From Octopus sinensis (taxonomy: Eukaryota), in the NCBI RefSeq assembly GCF_006345805.1, contig NW_021832310.1:1-31378 (forward strand): a stretch of 31,378 nucleotides of DNA. The letters are read 5' to 3'. The notes beneath the pieces were generated by a model. That model did no database searches. It was given only the letters and a program-made list of their open reading frames with translations, and was not told the origin of the DNA. Position 1 is the first letter of the stretch; each line of letters begins with the position of its first letter. This document shows, one piece after another, positions 4,286 through 28,199 of this stretch. The translations under genes and the position numbers were made by a program.

Positions 4286-4698
4286 AAGGCGGCGAGCTGG
4301 CAGAAACGTTAGCACACCGGGCGAAATGCATAGCCGTATTTCGTCTGCCATTACGTTCTGAGTTCAAATTCCGCCGAGGTCGACTTTGCCTTTCATCCTT
4401 TCGGGATCGATCAATTAAGTACCAGTTATGCACTGGGGTCGATGTAATCGACTTAATCCGTTCGTCTGTCCTTGTTTGTCCTCTCTGTGTTTAACCCCTT
4501 GTGGGTGGTAAAGAAATAAGCATTTCGTCTGCCGTTACGTTCTGAGTTCAAATTCCGCCGAGGTCGACTTCGCCTTTCATCCTTTCGGGATCGATCAAGT
4601 ACCAGTTACGCACTGGGGTCGATGTAATCGACTTAATCCGTTTGTCTGTCCTTGTTTGTCCTCTCTGTGTTTAACTCCTTGTGGGTAGTAAAGAAATA
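4286..4698 (+). mobile_element. SINE family M tandem dimer (full unit + head-less unit, both tail X)
   Basis: AAGGCGGCGAGCTGGCAGAAACGTTAGCAC head. The second unit restarts at CATTTCGTCTGCC (4521). Flanking direct repeat GGTACTTTGGC at 4271-4281 and 4699-4709. Confidence 0.93.
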
Positions 4699-4836
4699 GG
4701 TACTTTGGCTCAAATACATTTCCGGATTACTGATTTTTTCGAACCAGGGATAGTTACCTTGGTCAACATATTCTAAATTAAACAAAGATTAATGTTTTAC
4801 ACAAAGAATTAAATGTTGTATATTTAAATACGCATA

Positions 4837-5173
4837 CGAAGTCACATGCCTCAGTGGTTAGAGCAATGGGCACACAATCATTAGATTGTAAGTTCGATTC
4901 CTAGGCTGGGCTATGTGTTGTGTTCTTAAGCAAGACACTTTATTCCACGTTGCTCCAGTTCACTCAGCTGTAGAAATCATTTGCAATGTCGCTAGTGCCA
5001 AGTTGTATCGGCCTTTGCTTTTCCCTTGGATAACATCAGTGGCATGAAGGGGGAGGCTGGCGTGCATGGGCAACTGCTGGTCTTCCCTAAACAACCTTGC
5101 CTGGACCTGTGCCTTAGAAGGGAACTTTCCTCCTGCAATCCCATGGTCATTCATGACCGAAGAGGCTCTTTAT
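4837..5173 (+). mobile_element. tRNA-derived SINE, head A + tail 3
   Basis: A box TGCCTCAGTGG, B box AGTTCGATTCC, core CTTAAGCAAGACACTTTATTCCACGTTGCTCCAG. TSD ATACGCATA at 4828-4836 and 5174-5182. Confidence 0.88.
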
Positions 5174-5811: not shown

Positions 5812-6234
5812 ATGGGCGACGAGCTGGCAGAAACGTTAGCACGCCGGCAAAGTGCTTAGTACTATTTCGTCTGTCTTTACGTTCCGAGTTCAAATTCTGC
5901 CAAGTCGACTTTGACTTCCATCCTTTCGGGGTCGATTAAATAAATGCCGGTTACGCACTGGGGTGGATATAATCGACTTAATCCCTTTGTCTGTCCTTGT
6001 TTATCCTTGTGGGCAGTTAAGAAATAAGAGACGTTAGCACACCGGGTAAAATACTTAGCGCTATTTCGTCTGTCTTTACGTTCTGAGTCCAAATTCTGCC
6101 GAGGCCGACTTTGCCTTTCATCCTTTCGGGGTTGATAAATTAAGTACCAGTTGCGTACTAGGGTTGATCTAATCAACTGGCTCCCCCCCCCCCAAAAAAA
6201 AAAAATTGCGGACCTTGTGCCTAGAATAGTAAAG
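5812..6234 (+). mobile_element. SINE family M heterodimer (tail X unit + tail Y unit)
   Basis: GGCGACGAGCTGGCAGAAACGTTAGCACG head. The second unit starts at ACGTTAGCAC (6031). 15-bp TSD with one mismatch: AATATGCTGTTACGT (5797-5811) / AATATACTGTTACGT (6235-6249). Confidence 0.93.
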
Positions 6235-6278
6235 AATATACTGTTACGTGCATTTGAAATAAATGTCTCTCGAATACT

Positions 6279-6535
6279 GAAGATGCGTGGCTTAAGTGTT
6301 AGGGGTGTGGCACTCACGATCCCGCGATCGTGATCTCGATTTCCGGATCGGGCAGGTCGTTGTGTTTTTAAGCAAAACATTTCATTTCGCAAAGTTTCAT
6401 TTTACTCAGCTGTAAATGAGCGATTCTCTGACGGACAAGGCGCCCCATCCAGAGCTGAACGTTGCAACCTCGGTCCCTTATACGCCGTAGAAACCAGGAA
6501 ACCGTCTATAGGAGTCCTAGGACTCGAGACGTTAA
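6279..6535 (+). mobile_element. Degenerate SINE, head A + tail 1-like
   Basis: GATGCGTGGCTTAAGTGTTAG head, TTTTAAGCAAAACATTTCATTTC core, and GGCGCCCCATCCAG..TACGCCGTAGAAACCAGGAAAC tail similar to 346-420. Confidence 0.75.
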
Positions 6536-11000: not shown

Positions 11001-11399
11001 ACTCTCTTTTTCTCTTTTACTTGTTTCAGTCATTTGACTGCGGCCATGCTGGAGCACCGCCTTTAATCGAGCAACTCGACCCCGGGACTTATTCTTTTGT
11101 AAGCCCAGTACTTATTCTATCGGTCTCTTTTTGCCGAACCGCTAAGTGACGGGAACATAAACACACCAGCATCGGTTGTCAAGCAATGCTAGGGGGACAA
11201 ACACAAAGACGCATATATATATATATACATATATACGACGGGCTTCTTTTCAGTTTCCGTCTACCAAATCCACTCACAAGGCTTTGGTCGGCCCGAGGCT
11301 ATAGCAGAAGACACTTGCCCAAGGTGCCACACAGTGGGACTGAACCCGGAACCATGTGGTTGGTAAACAAGCTACTTACCACACAGCCACTCCTGCGCC
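11001..11399 (-). mobile_element. Full-length SINE family K
   Basis: Minus strand GGCGCAGGAGTGGCTGTGTGGTAAG (A box)..GGTTCCGGGTTCAGTCCC (B box). Internal (TA)n at about 11214-11236 and 3' (AAAAG)n-like tail. Near-identical to 25919-26358. Confidence 0.95.
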
Positions 11400-15498: not shown

Positions 15499-15568
15499 TG
15501 ACATTCAACATCAATCACGGTCGATAGTCGCTGATGGACTCTAGTGTACAACAAAATATGCAGAAGGT
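15499..15568 (-). other. Candidate 70-nt exon (unverified)
   Basis: Minus-strand acceptor TTTTTGTGTTTTTACAG and donor CA|GTAGGT. One frame is open: LLHILLYTRVHQRLSTVIDVEC. No homology recognised. Confidence 0.2.
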
Positions 15569-15601
15569 CTGTAAAAACACAAAAATTGGATATATGTGTA
15601 T

Positions 15602-15666
<65 letters not shown>

Positions 15667-15719
15667 TTATCAAAAATTCAACAAGAGGAGGTTCAACAGA
15701 AACACGATATCTACTGCCA

Positions 15720-16430
15720 TCACTACCAATAAACAACATCATTACGACTACCACCATCACTATCACAACCACTACCATCACCATCGACCATTAATCACTA
15801 TCAACACTATTATCTCCACCGCAGCAATCATATCCGCGATTACGATAAGCACCACATCCACGACTACCACCATCGCTACCACCGCCATCAGGAGCAACTA
15901 CCAACACCACCACTACTCTAACTGCAGAACACCAGCACCAGCACAAACACCGACACAGAGACCAACGCTATCACCACCACCACCAGCACCGTCACCACCA
16001 CCACCACTACCACCACCACCACCACTCCACCTGCGGAACACTAGCACCAACACCAATGCTCTCACTACCAGTACTACTACTACTACAACTACTACTACTA
16101 CTACCACCACCACCATCACCAACGACACCACGACCGCCGCCGCCGCCGCCGCTACCATCACCACCACCACCACCACGACCGCAACCGCCCCCACCGCCAC
16201 CGCCGTCACCACCACCACCACTACCACCTCTACCTCCACCACCGTCTCTAGCCCATATCACCAGGAATGCCGCCGCCGCCGCCGCGCCGCCACCACCACC
16301 ACCACCACCACCACCACCACCAACGAGAAAAACAACAACAACATCTTTACCATTATCAATCACCAACACCAGTATAGTCACTGCCTCCTCCCACCAATCT
16401 GCCATCACCACCTCTACCTCCACCTCCTCC
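15720..16430. repeat. (CAC)n/(TAC)n/(GCC)n imperfect trinucleotide block
   Basis: Direct inspection; gives poly-Pro/Thr/Gly/Val ORFs. Confidence 0.92.
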
Positions 16431-16616
16431 GGAAGGGTATTATAAACGATAACAATTCAAAAAAACTTGCCTTTAAAGTTTACGCAGACGCCATTTTGAT
16501 GTCCTGCGTTTAAAAAATAAACAAACGTAGGATATACACGAAATATATATTAAGAAATATCAAGAGATACAATTATAAAAAATCAGTAAAATGTAAAACA
16601 AACACTGCCACTAACG

Positions 16617-16955: not shown

Positions 16956-17204
16956 TGTTGAAAGTAGTTGTGGTGTTTCGTTTCAGGTCAGTTCTGTTTA
17001 AGTATAATACCTATTTATTACGTTCAAAAGCGTTGCACTTCCGATCGGGTTGTCTTCAAGTTAAGTGTATCCTTTTAGAGTGCGATATAAGAAAAATATA
17101 CGTAATCAACCTGATTTCACCATTAACAATATATCTGACGTCAATTTTGAAGCAAGTCTGTGTTAGCATCAACTTCTCAAAGCTTGTATTAATATAACGT
17201 TTAT

Positions 17205-17550
17205 GTTTTATCCTTTATATGTGTCAGTCATTGGACTGCATCAATGCTGGGGCACCGCCTTCAAGGGTTTCAGTCAAACAAATCGGGGTCAATACTTGTT
17301 TTTTTTTTATTTTAAAGTCTCTTTCTTATTATATTGAAGTTCTTTTGTTGAATGGCTAAGTTAAAGGAGCATAGACCAACCAATATCAGTTGTCAAGTAT
17401 TGAGGGTGGCAGACACAAACACACACATGCCCGCACGCACCCACGTATGAACGACGGACTTTTGTAATTTTCTATCAACAGAATACATTCGCAAGGCCTT
17501 GGTCAGTCCGGAGCTATAATAGGAGACACGTGCTCAAAGGGTCAGGCAAT
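17205..17550 (-). mobile_element. Old, 5'-truncated SINE family K
   Basis: GTCAGTCATTGGACTGCATCAATGCTGGGGCACCGCCT..GTTGTCAAG..GCAAGGCCTTGGTCAGTCCGGAGCTATAATAGGAGACAC is collinear with 11020-11320. Confidence 0.8.
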
Positions 17551-17693: not shown

Positions 17694-17741
17694 GTGATCC
17701 CGTGATCACGTGATCCCGTGATCACGTGATCGAGCAGACTA
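17694..17741 (-). mobile_element. 3' tail remnant of head B/tail 2 SINE with expanded GTGATCMC repeats
   Basis: GTGATCAC-GTGATCGAGCAGACTATT aligns 22/27 with the reverse complement of the 9786-10097 tail, GTGATCACCGTGACCGACCAGGCTATC. Confidence 0.6.
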
Positions 17742-18105: not shown

Positions 18106-18501
18106 TCTTTATATATAAAAGTCAAGTTGTGCGTCTGTCTCCTACGATTTAGATTCCTAACTACTCCCACATTTTGCGGTGCAGTTTAACCAAAACCGGG
18201 TATCTTATAGTCGTGATTCATATCGAGCTCTTCTGGGTATTAACGCGCGTCTACGATGAGTCTACGATTAAAAAAAAATTTACCATAATTTTTTCCATTT
18301 TAATGCATTTTTTTCGCTATTATATAAAGAAAGTAACTCTCTAAAAATGTCTACGATGAGTCAACGATTTAAAAAAAAATTTACCATCATTTTCTTTCCA
18401 TTTTTAATGCATTTTTTTGCTATTTTTTGGCTATAACTCTCTAAAAATGCTTATATAGTTATTTCCCTTACAAACCCGAGCAACACCGGGCGATACTGCT
18501 A

Positions 18502-18900: not shown

Positions 18901-19103
18901 GTGTGTGTGCATGTATGTCTCTTTGTCCGTGATCACTGTTTAATAAGCGGTGTTGATGTGTTTAGGTCTTTGTAACCGAGTGGTTCGACAAAAGAGATTG
19001 ATAGAATATTAGTAGTTTTTCGATTCATTCTACAAAAAATTCTTCAAGGTGGTGCCCCAGCCTGACCACAATCTAATGAGTGAAACAAGTAAAGGATAAA
19101 AAA
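18622..19103 (+). mobile_element. 5'-truncated SINE family K with expanded internal microsatellite
   Basis: CTGCGTGGTACCTTGGGCAAGTGTCTTCTACTATAG..TGTGAGTGGATTTGGT, then about 200 bp of TA/TATG repeats (18718-18920), then AAGGTGGTGCCCCAGCCTGACCACAATCTAATGAGTGAAACAAGTAAAGGATAAAA. Confidence 0.88.
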
Positions 19104-20854
19104 TATCAAAAGGTGGTACGAAATCGAAAACATAAACTCAAAGAATTCTAAATAATATCAAAGAACCAAAATCGTCATGCTATCAATCCTTGAGAGCATT
19201 TAATGTTAGAATTCATCACTGAATTTCCATAGTAATATAGATGGCGTGAGGGTATCTAAGCTGGTATAAAAACATGAAATCTACCTTCAAAATTTGCAGA
19301 AATATCTATTTGAACGACGACGTATGGAACTTAGTATCAGATGCCAAAAACGAAAATGAAAACAAAGCAAAACGTCAATAATCACTGAATATATATTCAG
19401 TATCGCATAGCGAAGTATGGTAAGCATTATCGATAAATATAATCGATTTACAAAAGTAAGTATCAAACCATGAAAGTATCAAATCAATTTATAAAGATCA
19501 GATATCAAAGTGTCCATGAATGTATGAGAGTAGTTTTGAAATAGCTCAAATCTGTATCAATTTATCACAAAATCAGAGTCTCAAAGCATCAATGTATGAA
19601 AGTCTGAAACAAACACCAATCAATGATCAAACAGGGATCGATCATCAAACGCTCAAAATTAGTATCACTACATCAAAGTCTCAAGGTCAGTACGAATGCA
19701 TTGATATAAGACAAATGTTACTAATGCTTCCAAAAATAGGAAAATAGGCATTGAAGTGTAACAAATGTACCAACATGAGTTTCAACTCATTTGATAATGG
19801 AAATTAGATACTCTGCGAGTATCAACGACTGAATCGATATACAAAAAAAGATGCCATAGACGTGTGGATATCAATTTCATCAGTATCAGCATAAAATCCA
19901 TTAACTTATCAAAATGAGTACCAAGTACGAAAGTCGGTGCATGATATTAAATATAGCTTCAGAAATCTGAATCAGTATCAAGCTTTTGACTGAATGCACA
20001 CGAGTAACAAATAATTAAACTTAGATCAAAGCGTGCACAATCTCACACTATCTAATTTAGTACTAAAGGTTCAGATTATCAAATAGAGTGCTAATGTGCC
20101 GAAATCCTTATCAAAGAAACAAAGACGAGCTTCAAGAGACCACCGAATTATTAAAGTGCCCAAGTTAGCAGTTAGTTCTTAGAGTGCATTACTGTGATAA
20201 ATTAGATTGTTAAATATTAAAGTAAATACTATATTATAATAACAGAAAAAAAGCTTTGCATAAAATCATCGAAATTACTATCAACTTTTAAGTTTAGTAA
20301 ATGTCAAGAGAGTGAATGATAATAACTGCTTGATATGAAAATATTAATTTCGGCATTTTAGTATTACAAGGTCAAATAAGTACAAGGTCAAATAAGGGAA
20401 GGGAGTGTAAAATATATCGAACTCGGGAATATTGTAATGTCAAAGTGAACATCAGTGTAAGAAGAATAGAACCAAAAGGCATTCAATAATCAGATATTCT
20501 TACACAGAGTATGAATGGATTAAGTCTGTATCGACACATCAAGTCTCAAAGTAGGTTTCAAGTGTTAATTCAATACTCTAAACAAGAATGTGATTAAGAA
20601 TGTGTTTAAATATTAAATCCGGTATCAAATATGGAAATATCAAATCAAGTATTAAAGTTTATTAGCTTCAAATATCAAATGTATTTCATTATGATATCTA
20701 GTTCAAGGATCAAATATAATAGACTTCACAATGAGGCATCAAGCTGTTAAAATAAGTCCCATGGTAATGTTCAAGTCTTAATCTTTCAAAGTTGAATTTT
20801 AGAGTATAGAATATCATTGTGTATCAAAAAGTTTGAGGGGACGAGAACAAGTAG

Positions 20855-21615
20855 GCTATACCGAACCCCAATACATGGCTGGTATCTATTTTATTGAGCC
20901 TGAAAGGAAGAAAGATAAAGTAGACCTCAACGGAATGTAAACACAGAACGTGTTAGCTTCTTTTCTACTCTAGGCACAAGGCCCGAAATTTTTGGGAGGG
21001 GGCTAGTCGATTAGATTAACTGCAGTACGTAACTGGTACTTAATTTATCGACCCCGGAAGGAGGAAAGGCAAATTCGACCTCGGCAGAATTTCAACCCAT
21101 AATAATCTTTTCTACTCTACGCACAAGGTCCGAAATCTTTGAGGGCGGTTGCAGTCGATTAGATCGACCTCAATACGCAACTGGTAATTAATTTATCCAT
21201 CCCGAAAGTATGAAAGGCAAAGTCGACCTCCGCGAAATCTGAATTCAGAACATAAAGACAGACGAAATACCGCTAGGCATTTCCCCCAGCGTGCTAACGT
21301 TTCCTATTTCTTTATTGCCCACAAGGGGATAAACATAGAGGAGACAAACAGGGACAGACAAAGAGATTAAGTTGATTAGATCGACCTCAGTGCGTAACTG
21401 GTGCTTAATTTATCGACCCCCAAAGGATGAAAGGCAAAGTCGACCTCGGCGGAATTTGAACTTAGAACGTAAAGACAGACGAAATACCGCTAAGTACTTC
21501 GCCCGGCGTGCTTAACGTTTCCGCCAGCTCGCTGTCTTAGAACATGTTACCTTCTGAGGAAGAAATACCGCTCGAAATTTTGTCCGACCTGGTGATTCCG
21601 TCAGCGAAATATCCT
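20855..21615 (-). mobile_element. Old family M SINE split by a younger family M multimer
   Basis: Old head at about 21550-21615 (GAAATACCGCT) and old body at 20855-20955. They are separated by an insert flanked by AGAACGTGTTA (20945-20955) / AGAACATGTTA (21539-21549). Confidence 0.75.
20956..21538 (-). mobile_element. SINE family M trimer (X unit + Y unit + partial Y unit)
   Basis: Unit 1 at about 21537-21303 has the head and tail X. Unit 2 at about 21302-21100 starts at AAACGTTAGCACG and has tail Y. Unit 3 at about 21095-20958 starts near the B box and has tail Y. Confidence 0.9.
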
Positions 21616-22691
21616 TTACGTATAAAATATTAAAATCCATATTAAAATATTGCAGTCAGCATGAAACATAAAATGGCGCAAATTTGACTTACAATCGTTG
21701 TATGAAACACAATGACAAGTGTGAATGCGAATATAGTGTACAAGCATCATCAAAATATCAAAGGTCATAAACTGGGAAAAAAATGTGATTTTGTATCTAA
21801 GTAAAAAATGTAGTGGTAACATACACGAGTATTAGCATATCTGATAAAGTATCGAAGTATGAAATAATTAGTGCTTATTAGACTAACAAACTTTGTCTAA
21901 TAGTATTAAGTTATTAACGTCACACTTCCCTTAAAATTCAATATTTTACCGCATGTGACGTTAAATTATCTAAGTTTAATCTATTTGTATATTAAAGCAA
22001 ATTTTTGAAGTAGGTATATGTCATCATTAGGTGTAATGTATTATATTATTTAAGTTAACACGAAATAGTCGAGTTAGTATTAATATTAGTATAGATTTCT
22101 ATATCACAATAATATTTATGTGTGAAAGTAAGTTTTCAATTTATCTGCAAATGCAACAGCGTTCAAATCAGAATGAATAATCAAACCGAGTTCCAAGTAT
22201 TAATTCACTAACACGCGCGCGCGCCTATAGTTACTGTTGGTATATCAGATATCAAAGACACAAAATGGCGGCATTTTAGAACGATTAGAATCAGCTCCAG
22301 ATGTCTGTATCAAATTAGCAAAACCAGAATAATAAAGCAGGAAAATATGGTGGCACAATGTCAAATTTAAAAGTTAATATCTGATACAAAATCAGCACCA
22401 ACACAACAACAAAAAAAAAACATGTAAATACATTATTTTGAAAGTGCTAAGAATAGAAAAGAAAATTTTAAAGTAAAAAGTTAAGTTTCAAATTACAGAA
22501 ATGAGTTTCAAAATGTGGGTTTCCATTATTTCCATTATTTACATTATTTACATTTAACGGATATTTGTCCTCATCTTGTTTGTTGTTAACCCAACGTTTC
22601 GGCTGATATACAGCCCAGTCTTCATCAAATGTCTTGGAGAAATTTCGAACATGGGTTCTCATTCTTGAGGTATTTTCCGATGCTGTTGTTG

Positions 22692-22762
<71 letters not shown>

Positions 22763-22825
22763 GTTATTAATATTATTATTATTATTATTATTATTATCAT
22801 CATTATTATTATTATTATTATTATT

Positions 22826-23270
22826 TTCTGTCTTACTTCAAATTTTCTTCAATTTCTCGCCGGGTGTTTTCCGTACACCTAGAGCAGAGAAGCTCATTGA
22901 ATGCATTCCTATATTACACACGCAAATTCACAGGTAAAATATGTATTTAAAAAAGTTAATAAATAAATTCATGAATGGATGTTGTTTTCACAGCGATAAT
23001 GCTCTTTTCAGTACATGAGTCGTTCCAGTTAACACGACTTTTTGCACTTTCTGTAGGGATGGTAAACCTGGTATCATTTTCAAATAGGTTTCAGTACCTT
23101 TTTTTTTTATCATTCTTAGAGATTCTACAATCACTGTTACTGTAATCGCCTTGAAACGCCACATTTTTTTCAATTTCTATAAGCAAGTCTTTATATTTAC
23201 TGATTTTGTCAAATTCTTTTGCTGCTATATTGTGATCGCAAGGAATACTCATGTCAATTAATAAACAATT
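22826..23270 (-). mobile_element. 5'-truncated R4/Dong-like non-LTR retrotransposon (3' end)
   Basis: Coding remnant 23270-22988, putative 3' UTR 22987-22826, ending in an (AAT)n tract. Confidence 0.85.
22988..23270 (-). pseudogene. Restriction-like endonuclease C-terminus of R4/Dong-type LINE, frameshifted
   Basis: CLLIDMSIPCDHNIAAKEFDKISKYKDLLIEIEK / MWRFKAITVTVIVESLRMIKKKGTETYLKMIPGLPSLQKVQKVVLTGTTHVLKRALSL*. This fits the IDxxxP..KE.K..KY.DL..EI...W....VP+++G.LG pattern of RLE-type LINE C-termini. One extra A in the A-run near 23165 shifts the frame. Confidence 0.85.
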
Positions 23271-23275
23271 ATTAT

Positions 23276-23319
<44 letters not shown>

Positions 23320-24998
23320 ACTACTACTACTACTATTATTATTATTACTATTATTATTATTATCATTATCATTATTATCATTATCATCATTATCATTATC
23401 ATTATTATCATTATCATTATTATCATTATTATTGTTATTATTATTATTCACGTCCCTGCCGGGAATCGAACTTGGAATCTCTTAAATATAGAACTGTAAA
23501 ATGTGGGTTAAACTGCGAAAATCAGTATCAAACACAGGAGGCAGGGAGCTACAAAAAATATAACTGTGTATTAAAATTAATATCAAATTATAAAACGGAG
23601 TATTAACTATATTAATATCAAATGGAGTATCGAGCATCGGAGTATTACATGGGATATTAGCTGTCCAAGTATCACATACGGTATCAACTATTGCAGTACC
23701 AAATACAGTATCAAATATCCGAGTATCAAAGCTAATCTGAATTCGGTTTCAAAATACCTAAGTAAAGCTCAAGCTGTGACAACAACATCAGTATCAAGAT
23801 GTCAGACTAAATATCAAAGAAACGAATTATTCTGTTTATTTTTCCACTGAAATTTTTTAAATGATCAATGTATCATAATAGTGTCAAGTTCAAACGACGA
23901 TATCCAAACCTGAAGTTTAGGACAAACAATATTCAAATTCGTATCAAATCTAAAAGTCACTATTTATTTCGAAAGTTTTTATTTAGTCTGAAATCAGATC
24001 TAAAGTTATTACCGGCGTATTAATTTATCGAAATATCAGGTTAACTAAATCAATATCAAATGTGCAAAGGAGGATCAACGTATTAAAGCCTGTATCAATT
24101 ACAAAACTAGCTTTCAACAAATCAAAATTAATTCCTCATTAATAAAATCTGTGCTAAGAGATTGGAATATTGAATTAAAAGTCAATTATATCACAGAATT
24201 ATATCAAAATATCACAGAAGCAAAATAAATTTTGAAGGTACTACGAAGGAATCATTGTACCAATGTCTCAAAAGTTAGAAGAGTATCAAAAATTATTTTG
24301 AAATCAATATGAAGAAATTGCTGTACCAAAGTTTTCAAAGTCGGTATCAAAACCAGTATCAATGGGCGAATGCCAATATGAAATAAATATATATTCGAAT
24401 TAGTTTAAGCGTATCAAATTATCGAAGCCAGTGACAAAGTAGTAACGTGTTAGTGTATTAAATTCAGTCGGGAATATAAATAGCAGACATAAGACTAATA
24501 CTAAAATATGTTAGAAAATTTGAAAGTTTGAAAGTTTGAAAAGTTTGAAAATGGATGTTTGTATCAGAAATTCAAAAAATAGTTTTAAAAGTCAAATTAT
24601 TAAATATCTGTGGTATATAAACTAAACCGATATCAACGTGACAAATTTAGTACCAATGTATCAATTTATCTTTGTAAACCAAAACAACCACAGACATATC
24701 AATTTCGTTTGCTGAAATTTTGAAATCTTCTGTAAAATTTCAAAACTTATAGGTCGTTGTCAAGTATCGGAGCCAGATCTTGAAATATCAAATAATGGAA
24801 GTCAATACTGAGATATGAAAAGTCAATATAGAATATAAAAAGTTAGTCTCACGTTTCAAATCGTATAATATTAGGTATAAATATTTGAAAGTCAATATCA
24901 GATATAACCATCAGACTCAAAGTCGCCACTAATGTAACAAACTGTAAGAATATCGAAGTGAAATTGGAATATAAATGTTAATACTAAACTTGAATAAA

Positions 24999-25192
24999 AG
25001 GCGGCGAGCTGGTAGAATCGTTGCCGCGCCGGGGAAAAATATCTAGCGGCATTTCGCTCCTCGTTATGTTCTGAGTTCAAATTCCGCTGAGGTCGATAAA
25101 ATAAGTACCAGTTGAGCAGTAGGGTAGTGGGAGTCGACTTACATCCTCTCTCAATATTGCTGGCTTTGTGGCAAAATTTGAAACCAATATTA
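24999..25192 (+). mobile_element. SINE family M with 27-nt internal deletion and a third tail variant
   Basis: AGGCGGCGAGCTGGTAGAATCG head and GAGTTCAAATTCC. A single GGTCGA (25091-25096) stands where other copies have GGTCGA-21 nt-GGTCGA. Tail TGCTGGCTTTGTGGCAAAATTTGAAACC. Confidence 0.88.
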
Positions 25193-25330
25193 ACGCTGAA
25201 GAGTCAATAATACAAGTATCAGTTTCTGAATCGGTATGGAATATTAAATACACTGAAATTGCTAGCAAGCATCAGAATCACTATGAAACCCAGGATCGAT
25301 ATTTCTGTAGAAATATCGATACATCAATAC

Positions 25331-25610
25331 TGAGGTCTGTCCTGAGCGCCTGGAATCATTAGGTCCGGGCATAATCTAGTTTCCAGTGCATATGACTGAA
25401 ATTATGACACTCCCCGCTGAACGGAGGGCTTTTTGGTTCCAGGATAAACTTCCCAGCTATTGTTGTGTCCCGTTTATATCTGGGTGACCTGCAGCCAGGC
25501 GGAACGAAGTGCTTTTGATCGCGAACACAACGAATCCGCTGGGCCAGGAGTCGAACCCACGATCTTACGATCACAAGTGCAATACGGTAACCAATAGGCC
25601 ACACGTTCTC
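25331..25610 (-). mobile_element. tRNA-derived SINE with distinct body
   Basis: Minus strand GTGTGGCCTATTGGTT (A box)..GGGTTCGACTCC (B box)..GTTGTGTTCGCGATCAAAAGCACTTCG, resembling the head A core, then a unique body. The 3' boundary is approximate. Confidence 0.75.
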
Positions 25611-25918
25611 ACCAAACCATCAAACACAAAACCAAAATTTGAAGTTCAGCAGCGATATTATAAAATCAGGATCAAGATGGTGGTCTTATGTCTATATCAA
25701 AAACAATTATTTGTTTAAAGTGTAAAAGGAAAAAATTCTGGCAGGATCATCATTGGGGAAGTATACGCATGACAACTACGACTGGCACGTGACTTATTTG
25801 GCTCTGTATTGAATCTTACCGAATTCCTTTTTCAACAGGTCCTTTTTCCAACATAAAAAAGAAGAAAAAAATTATTTTTTAGTTTGTTCTGTCACGCACA
25901 ATATTTCTAACCATTATA

Positions 25919-26159
25919 TACTCTTTTACTCTTTTACTTGTTTCAGTCATTTGACTGCGGCCATGTTTGAACACCGTCTTTAGTCGAACAAATCGAACCC
26001 AGGACTATTCTTTGTAAGCCTAGTACTTACTTATGCTATCGGTCTCTTTTGCCGAACCGCTAAGTTACGGGGACGTTAACACACGAGCATCGGTTGTGAA
26101 GCGACGGTGGTGGGAGGAAAAACACAGACACACAAATATACACACACACACACACACTT

Positions 26160-26358: not shown

Positions 26359-26649
26359 GTAAAATGTTTATTTCTAAACTTTTAACCGAAAGATTGCGTA
26401 AACTTTGCCTGAAATAACTTTTGAATTTACGGAATCAATTTATTTCATTGAAAAGATCTGGGCTATCCATCGACAATCTCACGTGGGAAATGAAACCATC
26501 TCATCGGTAACCCCGCAAAAAAAAAGAAAACGTCCATTTCTCCAATTCCCTTCCTCAGCCAATCATTGAGTTAAACCTAACAGCGAATAGGATTCTATGG
26601 CCAATGTTTTCGTTGCACTAAAAACCCTGAAATCCGTTCTTTCGAACAG

Positions 26650-26733
26650 AGCTTGTTCGACACAAAGTTTAGCACGAGAGCATCATACTGACGATGTTAG
26701 AAAACGAATTTCTTTGGAAGACTTTTGTCAAAA
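26650..26733 (+). other. Candidate 84-nt symmetric (phase 2-2) exon (unverified)
   Basis: Acceptor CCGTTCTTTCGAACAG and donor AA|GTATGC. Only one frame is open: ACSTQSLAREHHTDDVRKRISLEDFCQ(K). No homology recognised with confidence. Confidence 0.25.
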
Positions 26734-27424
26734 GTATGCTGTGTAAAACATTATAAAAACATTATATGTTAAACACGTCCGTTCCTTGCGGTGTGACTCA
26801 ATCAAACGTGGGGACTGGCGAATAAGCGTCGACAGAGAAGATACGAAGCAATATCAATCACAACTTCTTGTGAAAGCGAACAAATGTGACCCTTACACAC
26901 CCTTGAATGTCCTCGTTGGCTTTCATTTCAGATCTGCACAGCTGTTCATTCCTACACACGTCATCTTTGATTTGTATGGGCGGTGATTGTCTCTTTCTTT
27001 ACTGGTAGCCAGATGTTCATTAAAAACGCTGCACCGAACACACTTGACCTAATAATTTATGATAACTTGCGAACCTGATCATCGTTGTGTCTAGCCAGTC
27101 AGTTTACCATTTGAATGAAATCAGCGTCTTACCTATACACATTATAAATTTGAGCCAATTTATTCTGACATTTATGTCAACAATTATTTACTTGTTCAGG
27201 CAATTTGGTGGGCGTTCTGTTGCGTTAATCATCAAAAATAATAAGGGGATGGGCTGTTCCACTATCATAGATACGGTTCCCACATCATATCTCCATTTTT
27301 GCATACTGCTCATACACAAGTCAAATTCAACATGGAATTGATTACGACATTTGTACTCGCACCACTTGAACATCGGGGCCCTTAAAACAAATTTTCGTTA
27401 GTTTCAACTTTATAGGCCTAAAAC

Positions 27425-27515
27425 ATGTAAGAACTGGGTTGGATTTGTTCCACTAAAATTCAGCAAGCTGGTGCTCCAGCATGGCCTCAGTCTCACGACT
27501 GAAACGAGGAGAAGA
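27425..27515 (+). mobile_element. 3' fragment of SINE family K
   Basis: GGATTTGTTCCACTAAAATTC..GGTGCTCCAGCATGGCCTCAGTCTCACGACTGAAAC matches the K 3' end. Confidence 0.75.
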
Positions 27516-27829
27516 TTCCTTTAGATTTTGTAACCTTTATTGCGTGTTTCTGCGAAGAAAGAAATATATGTTATAATGTATTGGGAATTAGGACATAACA
27601 CAACATTTTATTTCTTGCAGGATTAATTAGCAAAGCTGCTGAGGATCACGCGCAGAAAAAAAATCAAATTAAAGATGGAGCACAAACTATAAATGCGAAC
27701 ACATTAGTGGACAGTTGCCGCCATTTTTATCCACACCTCCTCTTTAATATCGTTAATATCATGATAGCCATTATATGAAACATAGCTGTCGTTATATAGC
27801 CGCCATCTTTCACTCTAATACTCATCATC

Positions 27830-28199
27830 AGCATCACAAACAACACCACCAGCACCGCCACCGCTACGCTAATAACATCGTCATCATTATTATTATCATC
27901 ATCATCACCATCATCATCATCACTACCATTATCGTCATCGTCCTCGTCGTCATCATCGGCATCATCATCATCTCATCATCATCACCCCCACCACCACTAT
28001 CATCATCATAATCATCATCATCATCATTATCATCATCATTATCATCATCATTATCATCATCATAATCATCATCATCGTCGGCGTCGTCATCATCTTCAAC
28101 ACTATCATAATCATCGTTGACTTCATCGTTGTCATCGTGGTTGTCGCCGTCACCGTGGCCGTCGTGGTCATCTTCATAATAATCCACATCATCGTCATC

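What the first reader, a model, noticed from the sequence alone, without database searches (positions are those of the whole stretch)
19103..25710. Hidden ~6.6-kb strand-biased RTATCAA domain with a decayed 27-bp (12+15) higher-order repeat
Seen: this apparently unique AT-rich stretch is almost free of the microsatellites that fill the rest of the window. It is packed with plus-strand GTATCA/ATATCA motifs (e.g. 19103, 19155, 19334, 19460, 19476, 19502, 19554, 19662, 19819, 19868, 19883, 19975, 23525, 23791, 23811, 23941, 24053, 24092, 24283, 24344, 24356, 24411, 24561, 24658, 24785), while the reverse-complement form is much rarer. At 23600-23737 the motif starts alternate exactly 15,12,15,12,15,12,15,12,15 bp, with a consensus close to GTATCAAATATCCGA-GTATCAAATACA. 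The same 12/15/12 phasing recurs 3 kb away at 20610-20660, and a 14-mer TGTATCAATTTATC is shared between about 19553 and 24657. Inference: an ancient minisatellite or satellite domain that repeat finders would probably miss, later invaded by SINEs and a LINE. If the core hexamer is better preserved than the spacers, it could have been retained as a homotypic binding array (TGATAC is a Six/sine oculis-type core) or as a repeated motif in a lncRNA. That functional reading is speculative.
Basis: partly seen in the sequence, partly recalled or inferred. Interest (0 to 1): 0.72.

Follow-up and report, generated by a model that had tools for sequence, protein, structure and literature searches.

The report
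Old decayed AT-rich minisatellite block
A roughly 4.4-kb stretch of non-coding DNA, later split by mobile-element insertions, is packed with same-strand copies of the short word RTATCAAA; it is most likely the worn-down remnant of a short tandem repeat, which is ordinary, and nothing points to a function.

Summary
RTATCA occurs 52 times on the + strand and 6 times on the - strand in 19103-25710. Dinucleotide shuffles give 10.7±3.2 on the + strand (z≈13), and the rest of the window has 0.7 per kb. All 25 listed positions check out, as do the exact 15/12 alternation at 23600-23737, the 12/15/12 echo at 20610-20649 and the shared 14-mer.

With the insertions removed, the domain is one ~4.4-kb block. 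The insertions are SINEs at 20851-21539, 24997-25192 and 25341-25611, and a LINE tail with microsatellites at 22421-23499. The block has even motif density, sharp edges and no perfect microsatellites.

The 27-bp higher-order repeat is local. It is strong only at 23579-23737, with faint relics at three or four other spots. Outside it there is no 27/54-bp phasing, only weak 8/12/20-bp signals. In simulations, a domain-wide 27-bp array that decayed to this motif count would still be strongly periodic.

One-mismatch variants are also + strand biased, with a transition-to-transversion ratio near 2:1. This fits neutral decay of about 25% per site.

I read it as an old, heterogeneous-unit AT-rich minisatellite (cryptically simple DNA) invaded by transposons. 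The binding-array and lncRNA readings have no support here and could not be tested. No other genomic DNA from this organism could be obtained for comparison.

The parts
19103..20850 (+). Segment A of the RTATCAAA-rich block
   Evidence: 17 RTATCA (+) vs 4 (-), shuffle z 6.2. There are 3-7 near-8-mers per 250 bp. The left edge abuts a dispersed repeat at 19037-19102.
19453..19687 (+). Relic of an 8/12-bp-unit tandem array inside segment A
   Evidence: Wraparound alignment to AGTATCAA scores 93 against a shuffle 95% maximum of 33.5; the 12-, 15- and 27-mer units score 31-39 at 19453-19515. Weak period-4/8 autocorrelation in 19103-20130.
20610..20717 (+). Faint echo of the 12/15 array
   Evidence: Starts spaced 12,15,12. 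BLAST matches 20603-20656 to 23662-23715 at 74% over 54 bp, E 3e-5. Wraparound scores are 34-51, above the shuffle threshold. Lag-27 z is only 2.5.
20851..21539 (+). Inserted SINE copies (about three partial units in tandem); not part of the original block
   Evidence: Matches other copies in the window at 2260-2475, 4286-4700 and 5820-6239 with 72-87% identity. TRF reports period 148 at 20959-21230. No RTATCA inside.
21540..22420 (+). Segment B of the block, with lower exact-motif density
   Evidence: 5 RTATCA (+) vs 1 (-), z 2.7. About 15 near-8-mers (+) vs 1 (-) in 21501-22500. The first ~80 bp may still be SINE tail.
22421..23499 (-). Inserted block: minus-strand LINE ORF2 C-terminal fragment and another retroelement fragment, with (TAA)n and (GTA)n/(ATA)n tails
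   Evidence: The minus-strand reading frame at 22991-23258 has 54-74% identical protein homologues. One homologue lies on a contig between genes with Exo_endo_phos_2 and RVT_1 Pfam hits. L123 is 74% identical at the DNA level to 22793-23268. TRF microsatellites at 22695-22825 and 23276-23448.
23500..25000 (+). Segment C of the block, the densest part
   Evidence: 27 RTATCA (+) vs 0 (-), z 13.3; z 12.5 without the periodic core.
23579..23737 (+). The only clear minisatellite: about 5 copies of a 27-bp unit made of a 15-mer and a 12-mer
   Evidence: Exact 15/12 alternation. TRF periods 27 and 12. Lag identity is 0.61 at 27, 0.46 at 12 and 0.42 at 15; the 27-mers are 63% identical pairwise. Wraparound score is 124 against a shuffle threshold of 30.
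24202..24362 (+). Small relics of 8- and 12-15-bp units
   Evidence: Wraparound hits at 24202-24290 (8-mer unit, score 46) and 24335-24362 (15-mer unit, score 27, at threshold). BLAST matches 24041-24085 to 23603-23647 at 73%.
24997..25192 (-). Inserted SINE copy in the opposite orientation to the 20851-21539 copies
   Evidence: BLAST and inverted-repeat matches to the other SINE copies.
25193..25340 (+). Short continuation of the block between two SINEs
   Evidence: Motif-like words GTATCAG, ATATTAAA, GCATCAG and ACATCAAT on the + strand. Only one exact RTATCA.
25341..25611 (-). Inserted second SINE family
   Evidence: 25473-25611 matches 240-331, 4877-4972 and 6278-6416. The left boundary and the strand were judged by eye from the sequence.
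25612..25710 (+). Probable right-hand tail of the block
   Evidence: CCATCAAAC, GGATCAAG and ATATCAAAAAC on the + strand. Motif density falls to background after about 25710.

Best explanation
The region is a single old block of about 4.4 kb of AT-rich, cryptically simple DNA. It is the decayed product of repeated short-range tandem duplication (replication slippage or unequal exchange) of units built on the 8-mer RTATCAAA with spacers of varying length, giving units mostly of 8, 12, 15 and 20 bp. Tandem duplication keeps orientation, so all copies lie on one strand.

The block then accumulated roughly 25% substitutions per site. It was split by at least four retroelement insertions (SINEs and a LINE tail that brought microsatellites with it). 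The 27-bp (15+12) array at 23579-23737 is one local expansion in which a pair of units was amplified together; it is not the ancestral structure of the whole domain. The block most likely has no sequence-specific function.

Shown here: motif enrichment, strand bias, block boundaries, insertions, the local array, and the absence of domain-wide 27-bp periodicity. Inferred: the slippage mechanism, the heterogeneous ancestral units, neutrality, and the relative timing of events.
For: Enrichment and strand bias far exceed shuffles.

Motif density is even across the three main segments and drops to zero exactly inside the TE insertions, so the block predates them.

All the commoner one-mismatch variants of TATCAA are also + strand biased (TATTAA 22:6, TATGAA 9:0, CATCAA 7:0, AATCAA 7:0). 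After subtracting the - strand count, the excess per variant is about 7.2 for transitions and 3.8 for transversions, a mutation-like spectrum. The ratio of one-mismatch to exact copies implies d≈0.23-0.28. That back-calculates to about 200 original units with a mean length of about 22 bp (my arithmetic).

Distances between motif-like starts peak at 8, 12, 15 and 20 bp. Autocorrelation is modestly raised at lags 8, 12 and 20.

Several short patches still align to tandem 8/12/15/27-mers above shuffle thresholds.

The region has no long ORF, no Pfam domain, no Rfam or tRNA hit and no terminal inverted repeats. No other part of the window shows a comparable dispersed word enrichment.
Against: No orthologous or paralogous sequence from the same organism could be obtained, so neutrality and single-copy status are inferred, not shown.

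In the 27-bp array the hexamer columns match the consensus more often than the spacer columns do (88% vs 68%, Fisher p 0.007), which could hint at constraint. However, shifted registers score nearly as high (50-52 of 60 against 53), and the array was found through its motifs, which biases this comparison.

Why a block built by slippage contains no perfect microsatellite, when 10-13% of the surrounding sequence does, is not explained.
Confidence: 0.7

Rival explanations
1. One reading: the whole 6.6-kb domain was once a homogeneous 27-bp (12+15) higher-order satellite that has since decayed everywhere except 23600-23737.
For: The 27-bp array is real. A 54-bp stretch at 20603-20656 aligns to it at 74%. 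24041-24085 aligns weakly.
Against: Outside the core, lags 27, 15 and 54 show nothing (z 1.4, -0.7, -2.0), while lag 8 has z 5.4. Motif positions show no 27- or 54-bp phasing (z<0).

In simulated neutral decay, an array left with 57-64 RTATCA has z27 of 11-23 at indel/substitution ratios of 0.1-0.2. z27 falls to about 1 only at 0.8 indel events per substitution, and no setting reproduces the lag-8 excess.

The core array itself kept perfect 15/12 spacing over 135 bp although its 27-mers are only 63% identical pairwise. That argues for a low local indel rate.

The 20622 27-mer's 74-78% identity to core units is about what two shared 8-mers alone would give.
Confidence: 0.07
2. The block is a copy, or the internal non-coding region, of an old unclassified mobile element or dispersed satellite family of this genome. 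It would then be one of many copies rather than a locus-specific minisatellite.
For: The block has sharp edges and uniform internal composition. A curated Octopus vulgaris repeat annotation reports about 66% of that genome as repeats and includes a class of unknown repeats (PMC13282606), though that this window comes from an octopus is itself unconfirmed. Non-autonomous elements often carry internal short-repeat arrays (general knowledge).
Against: There are no terminal inverted repeats at the ends and no coding remnant. There is no second copy in the other 25 kb of the window. The 75-aa ORF from the block has no relative among 5.8 billion predicted proteins, though that is a weak test. Both edges coincide with later TE insertions, so the true termini cannot be read.
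Confidence: 0.15
3. The motif array is maintained for a function. It could be a homotypic DNA platform for a factor that recognises TGATAC/TGATAT (Six/So type) or ATCAAAG (which, from my own knowledge, resembles the TCF/LEF core). Alternatively it could be a repeated UAUCAAA element in a strand-specific transcript such as a lncRNA or intron that binds an RNA-binding protein.
For: TGATAC, GGTATCA and GATATCA are among the reported So sites (PMC5145141). ATCAAAG occurs 9:0 and TCAAAG 16:0 on + vs -. Strict strand polarity would suit an RNA-level role. The core columns are somewhat better kept than the spacers in the 27-bp array.
Against: Strand polarity is explained more simply by tandem duplication. 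DNA-binding clusters do not need it.

The base before GTATCA/ATATCA is A in 29 of 50 sites and G in 7 of 50, so few sites fit the longer So consensus.

Decayed variants are plentiful with a mutation-like spectrum. In particular C-to-T in the core gives TATTAA at 22:6.

The core-versus-spacer contrast disappears when the register is shifted. There is no Rfam match. No data on expression, chromatin or conservation were available.
Confidence: 0.05

Closest known systems
Decayed minisatellite / cryptically simple DNA (Tautz, Trick and Dover 1986 concept; cited from memory)
   Same: It is a non-coding, strand-polar scramble of a short word and its variants. It was produced by repeated local duplication and then blurred by substitution. 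It is mostly invisible to tandem-repeat finders.
   Different: The block is unusually long (about 4.4 kb) and evenly dense for a sequence with so little remaining periodicity. It contains no perfect microsatellite.
AT-rich minisatellites with units of variable length, such as those at the human rare fragile sites FRA16B and FRA10B (cited from memory)
   Same: AT-rich, with units of roughly 10-50 bp that share a core but differ in length, arranged head to tail on one strand.
   Different: Those arrays are young, highly similar and expandable. This one is about 25% decayed per site, and only about 150 bp is still recognisably tandem. No evidence of instability is available.
Higher-order repeat (HOR) organisation of satellite DNA, as in alpha satellite
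   Same: In 23579-23737 a pair of diverged sub-units (15 + 12 bp) is repeated as one 27-bp unit. Identity at lag 27 (0.61) exceeds identity at lags 12 and 15 (0.46, 0.42).
   Different: There are only about 5 copies, at 63% pairwise identity. It is not a long homogenised array, and the pattern does not extend across the domain.
Homotypic clusters of transcription-factor sites and repeat modules of lncRNAs (e.g. Xist or Firre repeats; cited from memory)
   Same: Many copies of one short motif are concentrated in a few kb.
   Different: No evidence of constraint, transcription or binding. The orientation bias and variant spectrum point to origin by duplication followed by neutral decay.

Membership tests
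Minisatellite (tandem repeat, unit about 10-60 bp) | Head-to-tail copies of a unit with detectable periodicity | tested here: met
   Met for 23579-23737 only: TRF periods 27 and 12, lag-27 z 7.6, exact 15/12 spacing.
Minisatellite (tandem repeat, unit about 10-60 bp) | The same periodicity across the whole claimed domain, 19103-25710 | tested here: not met
   No lag-27, lag-15 or lag-54 signal and no motif phasing outside the core. Only weak lags 8, 12 and 20 and a few short relics remain.
Higher-order repeat satellite | Copies one HOR period apart are more alike than neighbouring sub-units | tested here: met
   Met locally: identity is 0.61 at lag 27 against 0.46 and 0.42 at lags 12 and 15.
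Higher-order repeat satellite | A long, homogenised array of many HOR copies, usually present at many loci | tested here: not met
   About 5 copies, 63% pairwise identity. Simulation excludes a decayed domain-wide array. Genome-wide copy number could not be tested.
Transposable element | Terminal structures (TIRs or LTRs) or coding remnants | tested here: not met
   No inverted repeats at the block ends. No long ORF or Pfam domain in the motif-bearing parts.
Transposable element | Multiple dispersed copies in the genome | not testable with these tools
   No host genome was searchable. There is no second copy in the window. ORF-based look-ups found nothing.
Six/sine oculis binding-site cluster | Sites matching the reported So or Six sequences (GGTATCA, GATATCA, TGATAC) | tested here: inconclusive
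   The TGATAC core is present 27 times on the reverse complement. A G before the hexamer is seen in only 7 of 50 sites. The site list comes from PMC5145141.
Six/sine oculis binding-site cluster | Evolutionary constraint on the sites, or evidence of occupancy | not testable with these tools
   No orthologues or functional data. Internal proxies (variant spectrum, register test) give no support.
Structured or known non-coding RNA | A match to a curated RNA family | tested here: not met
   No Rfam hit at gathering threshold or at E≤1. No tRNA or tmRNA.

The most novel reading that the evidence does not exclude
The block is a conserved, strand-specifically transcribed repeat module (lncRNA or intronic) or a homotypic DNA platform, in which RTATCAAA/UAUCAAA cores are kept by selection while spacers drift. 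That would explain how about 50 exact cores persist with almost no residual periodicity.
Probability: 0.04. Interest if true: 0.6.

Novelty: new member of a known kind. Interest (0 to 1): 0.15.

Why it matters
It matters little biologically. It shows that a kb-scale, strand-polar word enrichment can hide in sequence that looks unique and that TRF mostly misses. It also shows that such a block can be dated relative to SINE and LINE insertions. It would matter more only if comparative or expression data showed constraint on the core motif, or if the block proved to be an unrecognised abundant repeat family relevant to repeat annotation of this genome.

Tried and rejected
- **Domain-wide 27-bp HOR.** Rejected by autocorrelation, motif-phase analysis, wraparound alignment and decay simulation.
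- **Longer hidden repeat unit.** Self-BLAST with word size 9 and +1/-1 scoring found only alignments of 54 bp or less inside the block.
- **Transposon ends.** No TIRs were found.
- **Coding or RNA gene.** There is no ORF of note. Stop-free frames of 75 aa (19520-19744) and 89 aa (23581-23847, running through the period-27 array) have no meaningful Pfam hit: the only one is E 0.017, 13.6 bits, against a cutoff of 27. There were no Rfam or tRNA hits.
- **Other DNA from the same organism.**
  - Exact-ORF look-ups returned nothing on record.
  - Protein searches with a block ORF and with a SINE-derived ORF returned nothing.
  - The LINE-tail ORF gave 6 homologues. The three contigs I fetched (L121-L123) share no SINE with the window, and only L123 matches the LINE fragment at the DNA level. 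L121 and L122 have unbiased RTATCA counts (11:11 and 16:23).
- **Metagenome scan.** A search for three GTATCAA at 11-16-bp spacing returned 120 unrelated contigs with generic tandem repeats. This was uninformative.
- **Core versus spacer conservation.** The test inside the 27-bp array is nominally significant but not robust to shifting the register, and it is biased by how the array was found.
- **Origin from the window's (TATC)n microsatellites.** I considered this because of the multiple-of-4 lags. I rejected it on composition: the block is 41% A, against 50% T for (TATC)n.
Full report

Yes. In 19103-25710 there are 52 RTATCA on the + strand and 6 on the - strand. The remaining 24.8 kb of the window has 17 and 14.

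One thousand dinucleotide-preserving shuffles of the region give 10.7±3.2 on the + strand (maximum 23, z 12.9). The - strand count is as expected. Enrichment holds separately in 19103-20850 (z 6.2) and in 23500-25000 (z 13.3, or 12.5 with 23600-23737 removed). It is weaker in 21600-22420 (z 2.7).

The motif extends to A-RTATCAAA-T/G. Allowing one mismatch to RTATCAAA gives 95 (+) vs 10 (-) inside the region and 29 vs 27 outside.

The finer details also check out:
- Motif-like starts at 23600-23723 are spaced exactly 15,12,15,12,15,12,15,12,15.
- Starts at 20610, 20622, 20637 and 20649 are spaced 12,15,12.
- The 14-mer TGTATCAATTTATC occurs only at 19553 and 24657.
- The motif-bearing parts contain no perfect microsatellite (0 of 4380 bp), against 10-13% in the rest of the window.

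**2. Anatomy**

A 250-bp sliding count shows the + strand motif at an even 3-10 near-8-mers per 250 bp in 19.1-20.8 kb, 21.5-22.5 kb and 23.5-25.0 kb. The count is 0-1 per 250 bp in the stretches between them. Those stretches are insertions:
- 20851-21539 is about three partial tandem copies of a SINE. The same SINE is present at 2260-2475, 4286-4700, 5820-6239 and, inverted, at 24997-25192.
- 22421-23499 holds minus-strand retroelement fragments with (TAA)n and (GTA)n tails. The reading frame at 22991-23258 has 54-74% identical homologues. One homologue sits on a contig between genes with Exo_endo_phos_2 and RVT_1 Pfam hits, so this is a LINE ORF2 tail.
- 25341-25611 is a second SINE family.

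With these removed, the domain is one block of about 4.4 kb. Its left edge abuts another dispersed repeat at 19037-19102. Its right edge fades at about 25710. The block therefore predates all these insertions.

**3. How much of it is a 27-bp higher-order repeat?**

Only about 150 bp. In 23600-23737, lag-27 autocorrelation has z 7.6 and lag-54 has z 6.1. Identity is 0.61 at lag 27, against 0.46 and 0.42 at lags 12 and 15, so the 15+12 pair really is the repeated unit there. The five 27-mers are only 63% identical pairwise.

Wraparound alignment to 8-, 12-, 15- and 27-mer consensus units exceeds the shuffle 95% maximum at 23579-23730 (score 124 against 30). It does so weakly at 19453-19515 (extending to 19687 for the 8-mer unit), 20611-20717, 24202-24290, 24335-24362, 21826-21866 and 20001-20102.

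Elsewhere there is no signal:
- Sub-segments show no lag-27, lag-15 or lag-54 signal.
- Pairwise distances between motif sites show no 27- or 54-bp phasing (z below 0).
- Self-BLAST finds no longer hidden unit.

The residual structure sits at lags 8, 12 and 20. For the domain without the core, z is 5.4, 3.1 and 3.0 at those lags. Distances between motif-like starts peak at 8, 12, 15 and 20 bp.

I simulated neutral decay of a homogeneous 27-bp array of the same length. When 57-64 RTATCA remain, lag-27 z is still 11-23 at indel-to-substitution ratios of 0.1-0.2. It falls to the observed level only at 0.8 indel events per substitution. No setting reproduces the lag-8 excess. The core array kept perfect spacing over 135 bp despite its divergence, so the local indel rate looks low. 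The domain-wide 27-bp origin is therefore rejected. The 27-mer is a local variant within a family of heterogeneous units built on the 8-mer.

**4. Decay or maintenance?**

All the commoner one-mismatch variants of TATCAA are themselves + strand biased: TATTAA 22:6, TATGAA 9:0, CATCAA 7:0, AATCAA 7:0, GATCAA 5:0 and TGTCAA 5:0. Using the - strand as background, the excess is about 43 over six transition variants and about 45 over twelve transversion variants. That is roughly 2:1 per variant, as expected from mutation.

The ratio of one-mismatch to exact copies implies about 0.28 substitutions per site for the hexamer and about 0.23 for the octamer. This back-calculates to about 200 original units with a mean length of about 22 bp. 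That agrees with the unit lengths seen. All of this is my arithmetic on those calls.

In the 27-bp array the hexamer columns match the consensus in 88% of cells and the other columns in 68% (Fisher p 0.007). However, shifted registers score 50-52 of 60 against 53, and the array was noticed through its motifs. I therefore do not count this as evidence of constraint. CpG is not depleted (observed/expected 0.98).

**5. What it is not**

- There is no long ORF. Stop-free frames of 75 and 89 aa exist, but they have no meaningful Pfam hit.
- There is no Rfam family at gathering threshold or at E≤1, and no tRNA.
- There are no terminal inverted repeats at the block ends.
- No other part of the window has a comparable dispersed word enrichment. 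Every other over-represented 6-mer belongs to an overt microsatellite or a SINE.

**6. Comparison beyond the window**

This failed. No genomic DNA from the same organism was reachable:
- Exact-ORF look-ups and protein searches with a block ORF and a SINE ORF returned nothing.
- The three contigs fetched through the LINE-tail homologues do not share the window's SINE.
- A metagenome scan for three phased GTATCAA returned unrelated generic repeats.
- The literature search found no described cephalopod satellite with this motif.

I could not confirm it.

**7. Most likely explanation (confidence about 0.7)**

The block is an old, heterogeneous-unit, AT-rich minisatellite, that is, cryptically simple DNA. 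It was made by repeated short-range tandem duplication, which fixes one orientation. It then decayed neutrally by about 25% per site and was split by retroelement insertions. One 15+12 pair was amplified locally about five times.

**8. Rivals**

- A copy of an unclassified mobile element or satellite family (0.15). This could not be tested without the genome.
This is largely refuted.
- A maintained binding or RNA motif array (0.05). The TGATAC core is among the reported So sites (PMC5145141). But only 7 of 50 sites have the preceding G of GGTATCA/GATATCA. Strand polarity is explained by duplication. Nothing internal indicates constraint.

**9. Verdict**

The origin story is half right. The functional idea is unsupported. 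This is an ordinary kind of sequence, so interest is low.

Noticed in passing
window 17694-17731: A perfect 16-bp tandem repeat, GTGATCCCGTGATCAC, in 2.4 copies (TRF 100% match). It creates two palindromic GATCACGTGATC words, each containing a CACGTG E-box, inside otherwise unique sequence.
   Followed up: no
window 18245-18449: A tandem duplication of roughly 100 bp (gtctacgatgagtc[t/a]acgatt...aaaaaaaaatttaccat...taatgcattttttt...ctctctaaaaat appears twice), seen by eye in the sequence.
   Followed up: no
window 19037-19105; 17202-17270(-); 11007-11066(-); 25924-25980(-): A third dispersed repeat family, about 60-70 bp matched at 74-82% identity, has at least four copies in the window. One copy forms the left border of the motif block. 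By eye, 27470-27510 looks like another copy.
   Followed up: partly
window 20864-21538, 2260-2475, 4286-4700, 5820-6239, 24997-25192: One SINE family occurs at five places in 31 kb. Twice it forms short tandem arrays of partial units: TRF period 180 at 4338-4698 and period 148 at 20959-21230. This suggests the SINE itself tends to duplicate in tandem, or that insertions nest.
   Followed up: partly
window 15500-16500: A C-rich (CAC/CCA)n low-complexity block with extreme GC skew (-0.57) and positive AT skew. It gives long artefactual proline-rich and glycine-rich ORFs.
   Followed up: no
window 23581-23847 (+): An 89-codon stop-free frame runs through the 27-bp array. The periods 12, 15 and 27 are all multiples of 3, which gives an 'SI..' peptide repeat. 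There is no start codon context and no meaningful Pfam hit. I take it as a by-product of the repeat, not a gene.
   Followed up: partly
window 26360-27860: This is the only long repeat-free, GC-richer (about 40%) stretch near the block. It has no over-represented words and includes two CCAAT-containing words around 26555-26610. I did not examine it for exons or promoter function.
   Followed up: no
L121 (ENA ERZ25066855 ctg916, 620 kb) and L122 (ENA ERZ21867824, 98 kb): Long contigs filed in ENA assembly records of the metagenome collection carry LINE-type genes (RVT_1, Exo_endo_phos_2) and homologues of the window's LINE tail. They are probably animal DNA inside metagenome assemblies. They lack the window's SINE.
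   Followed up: partly
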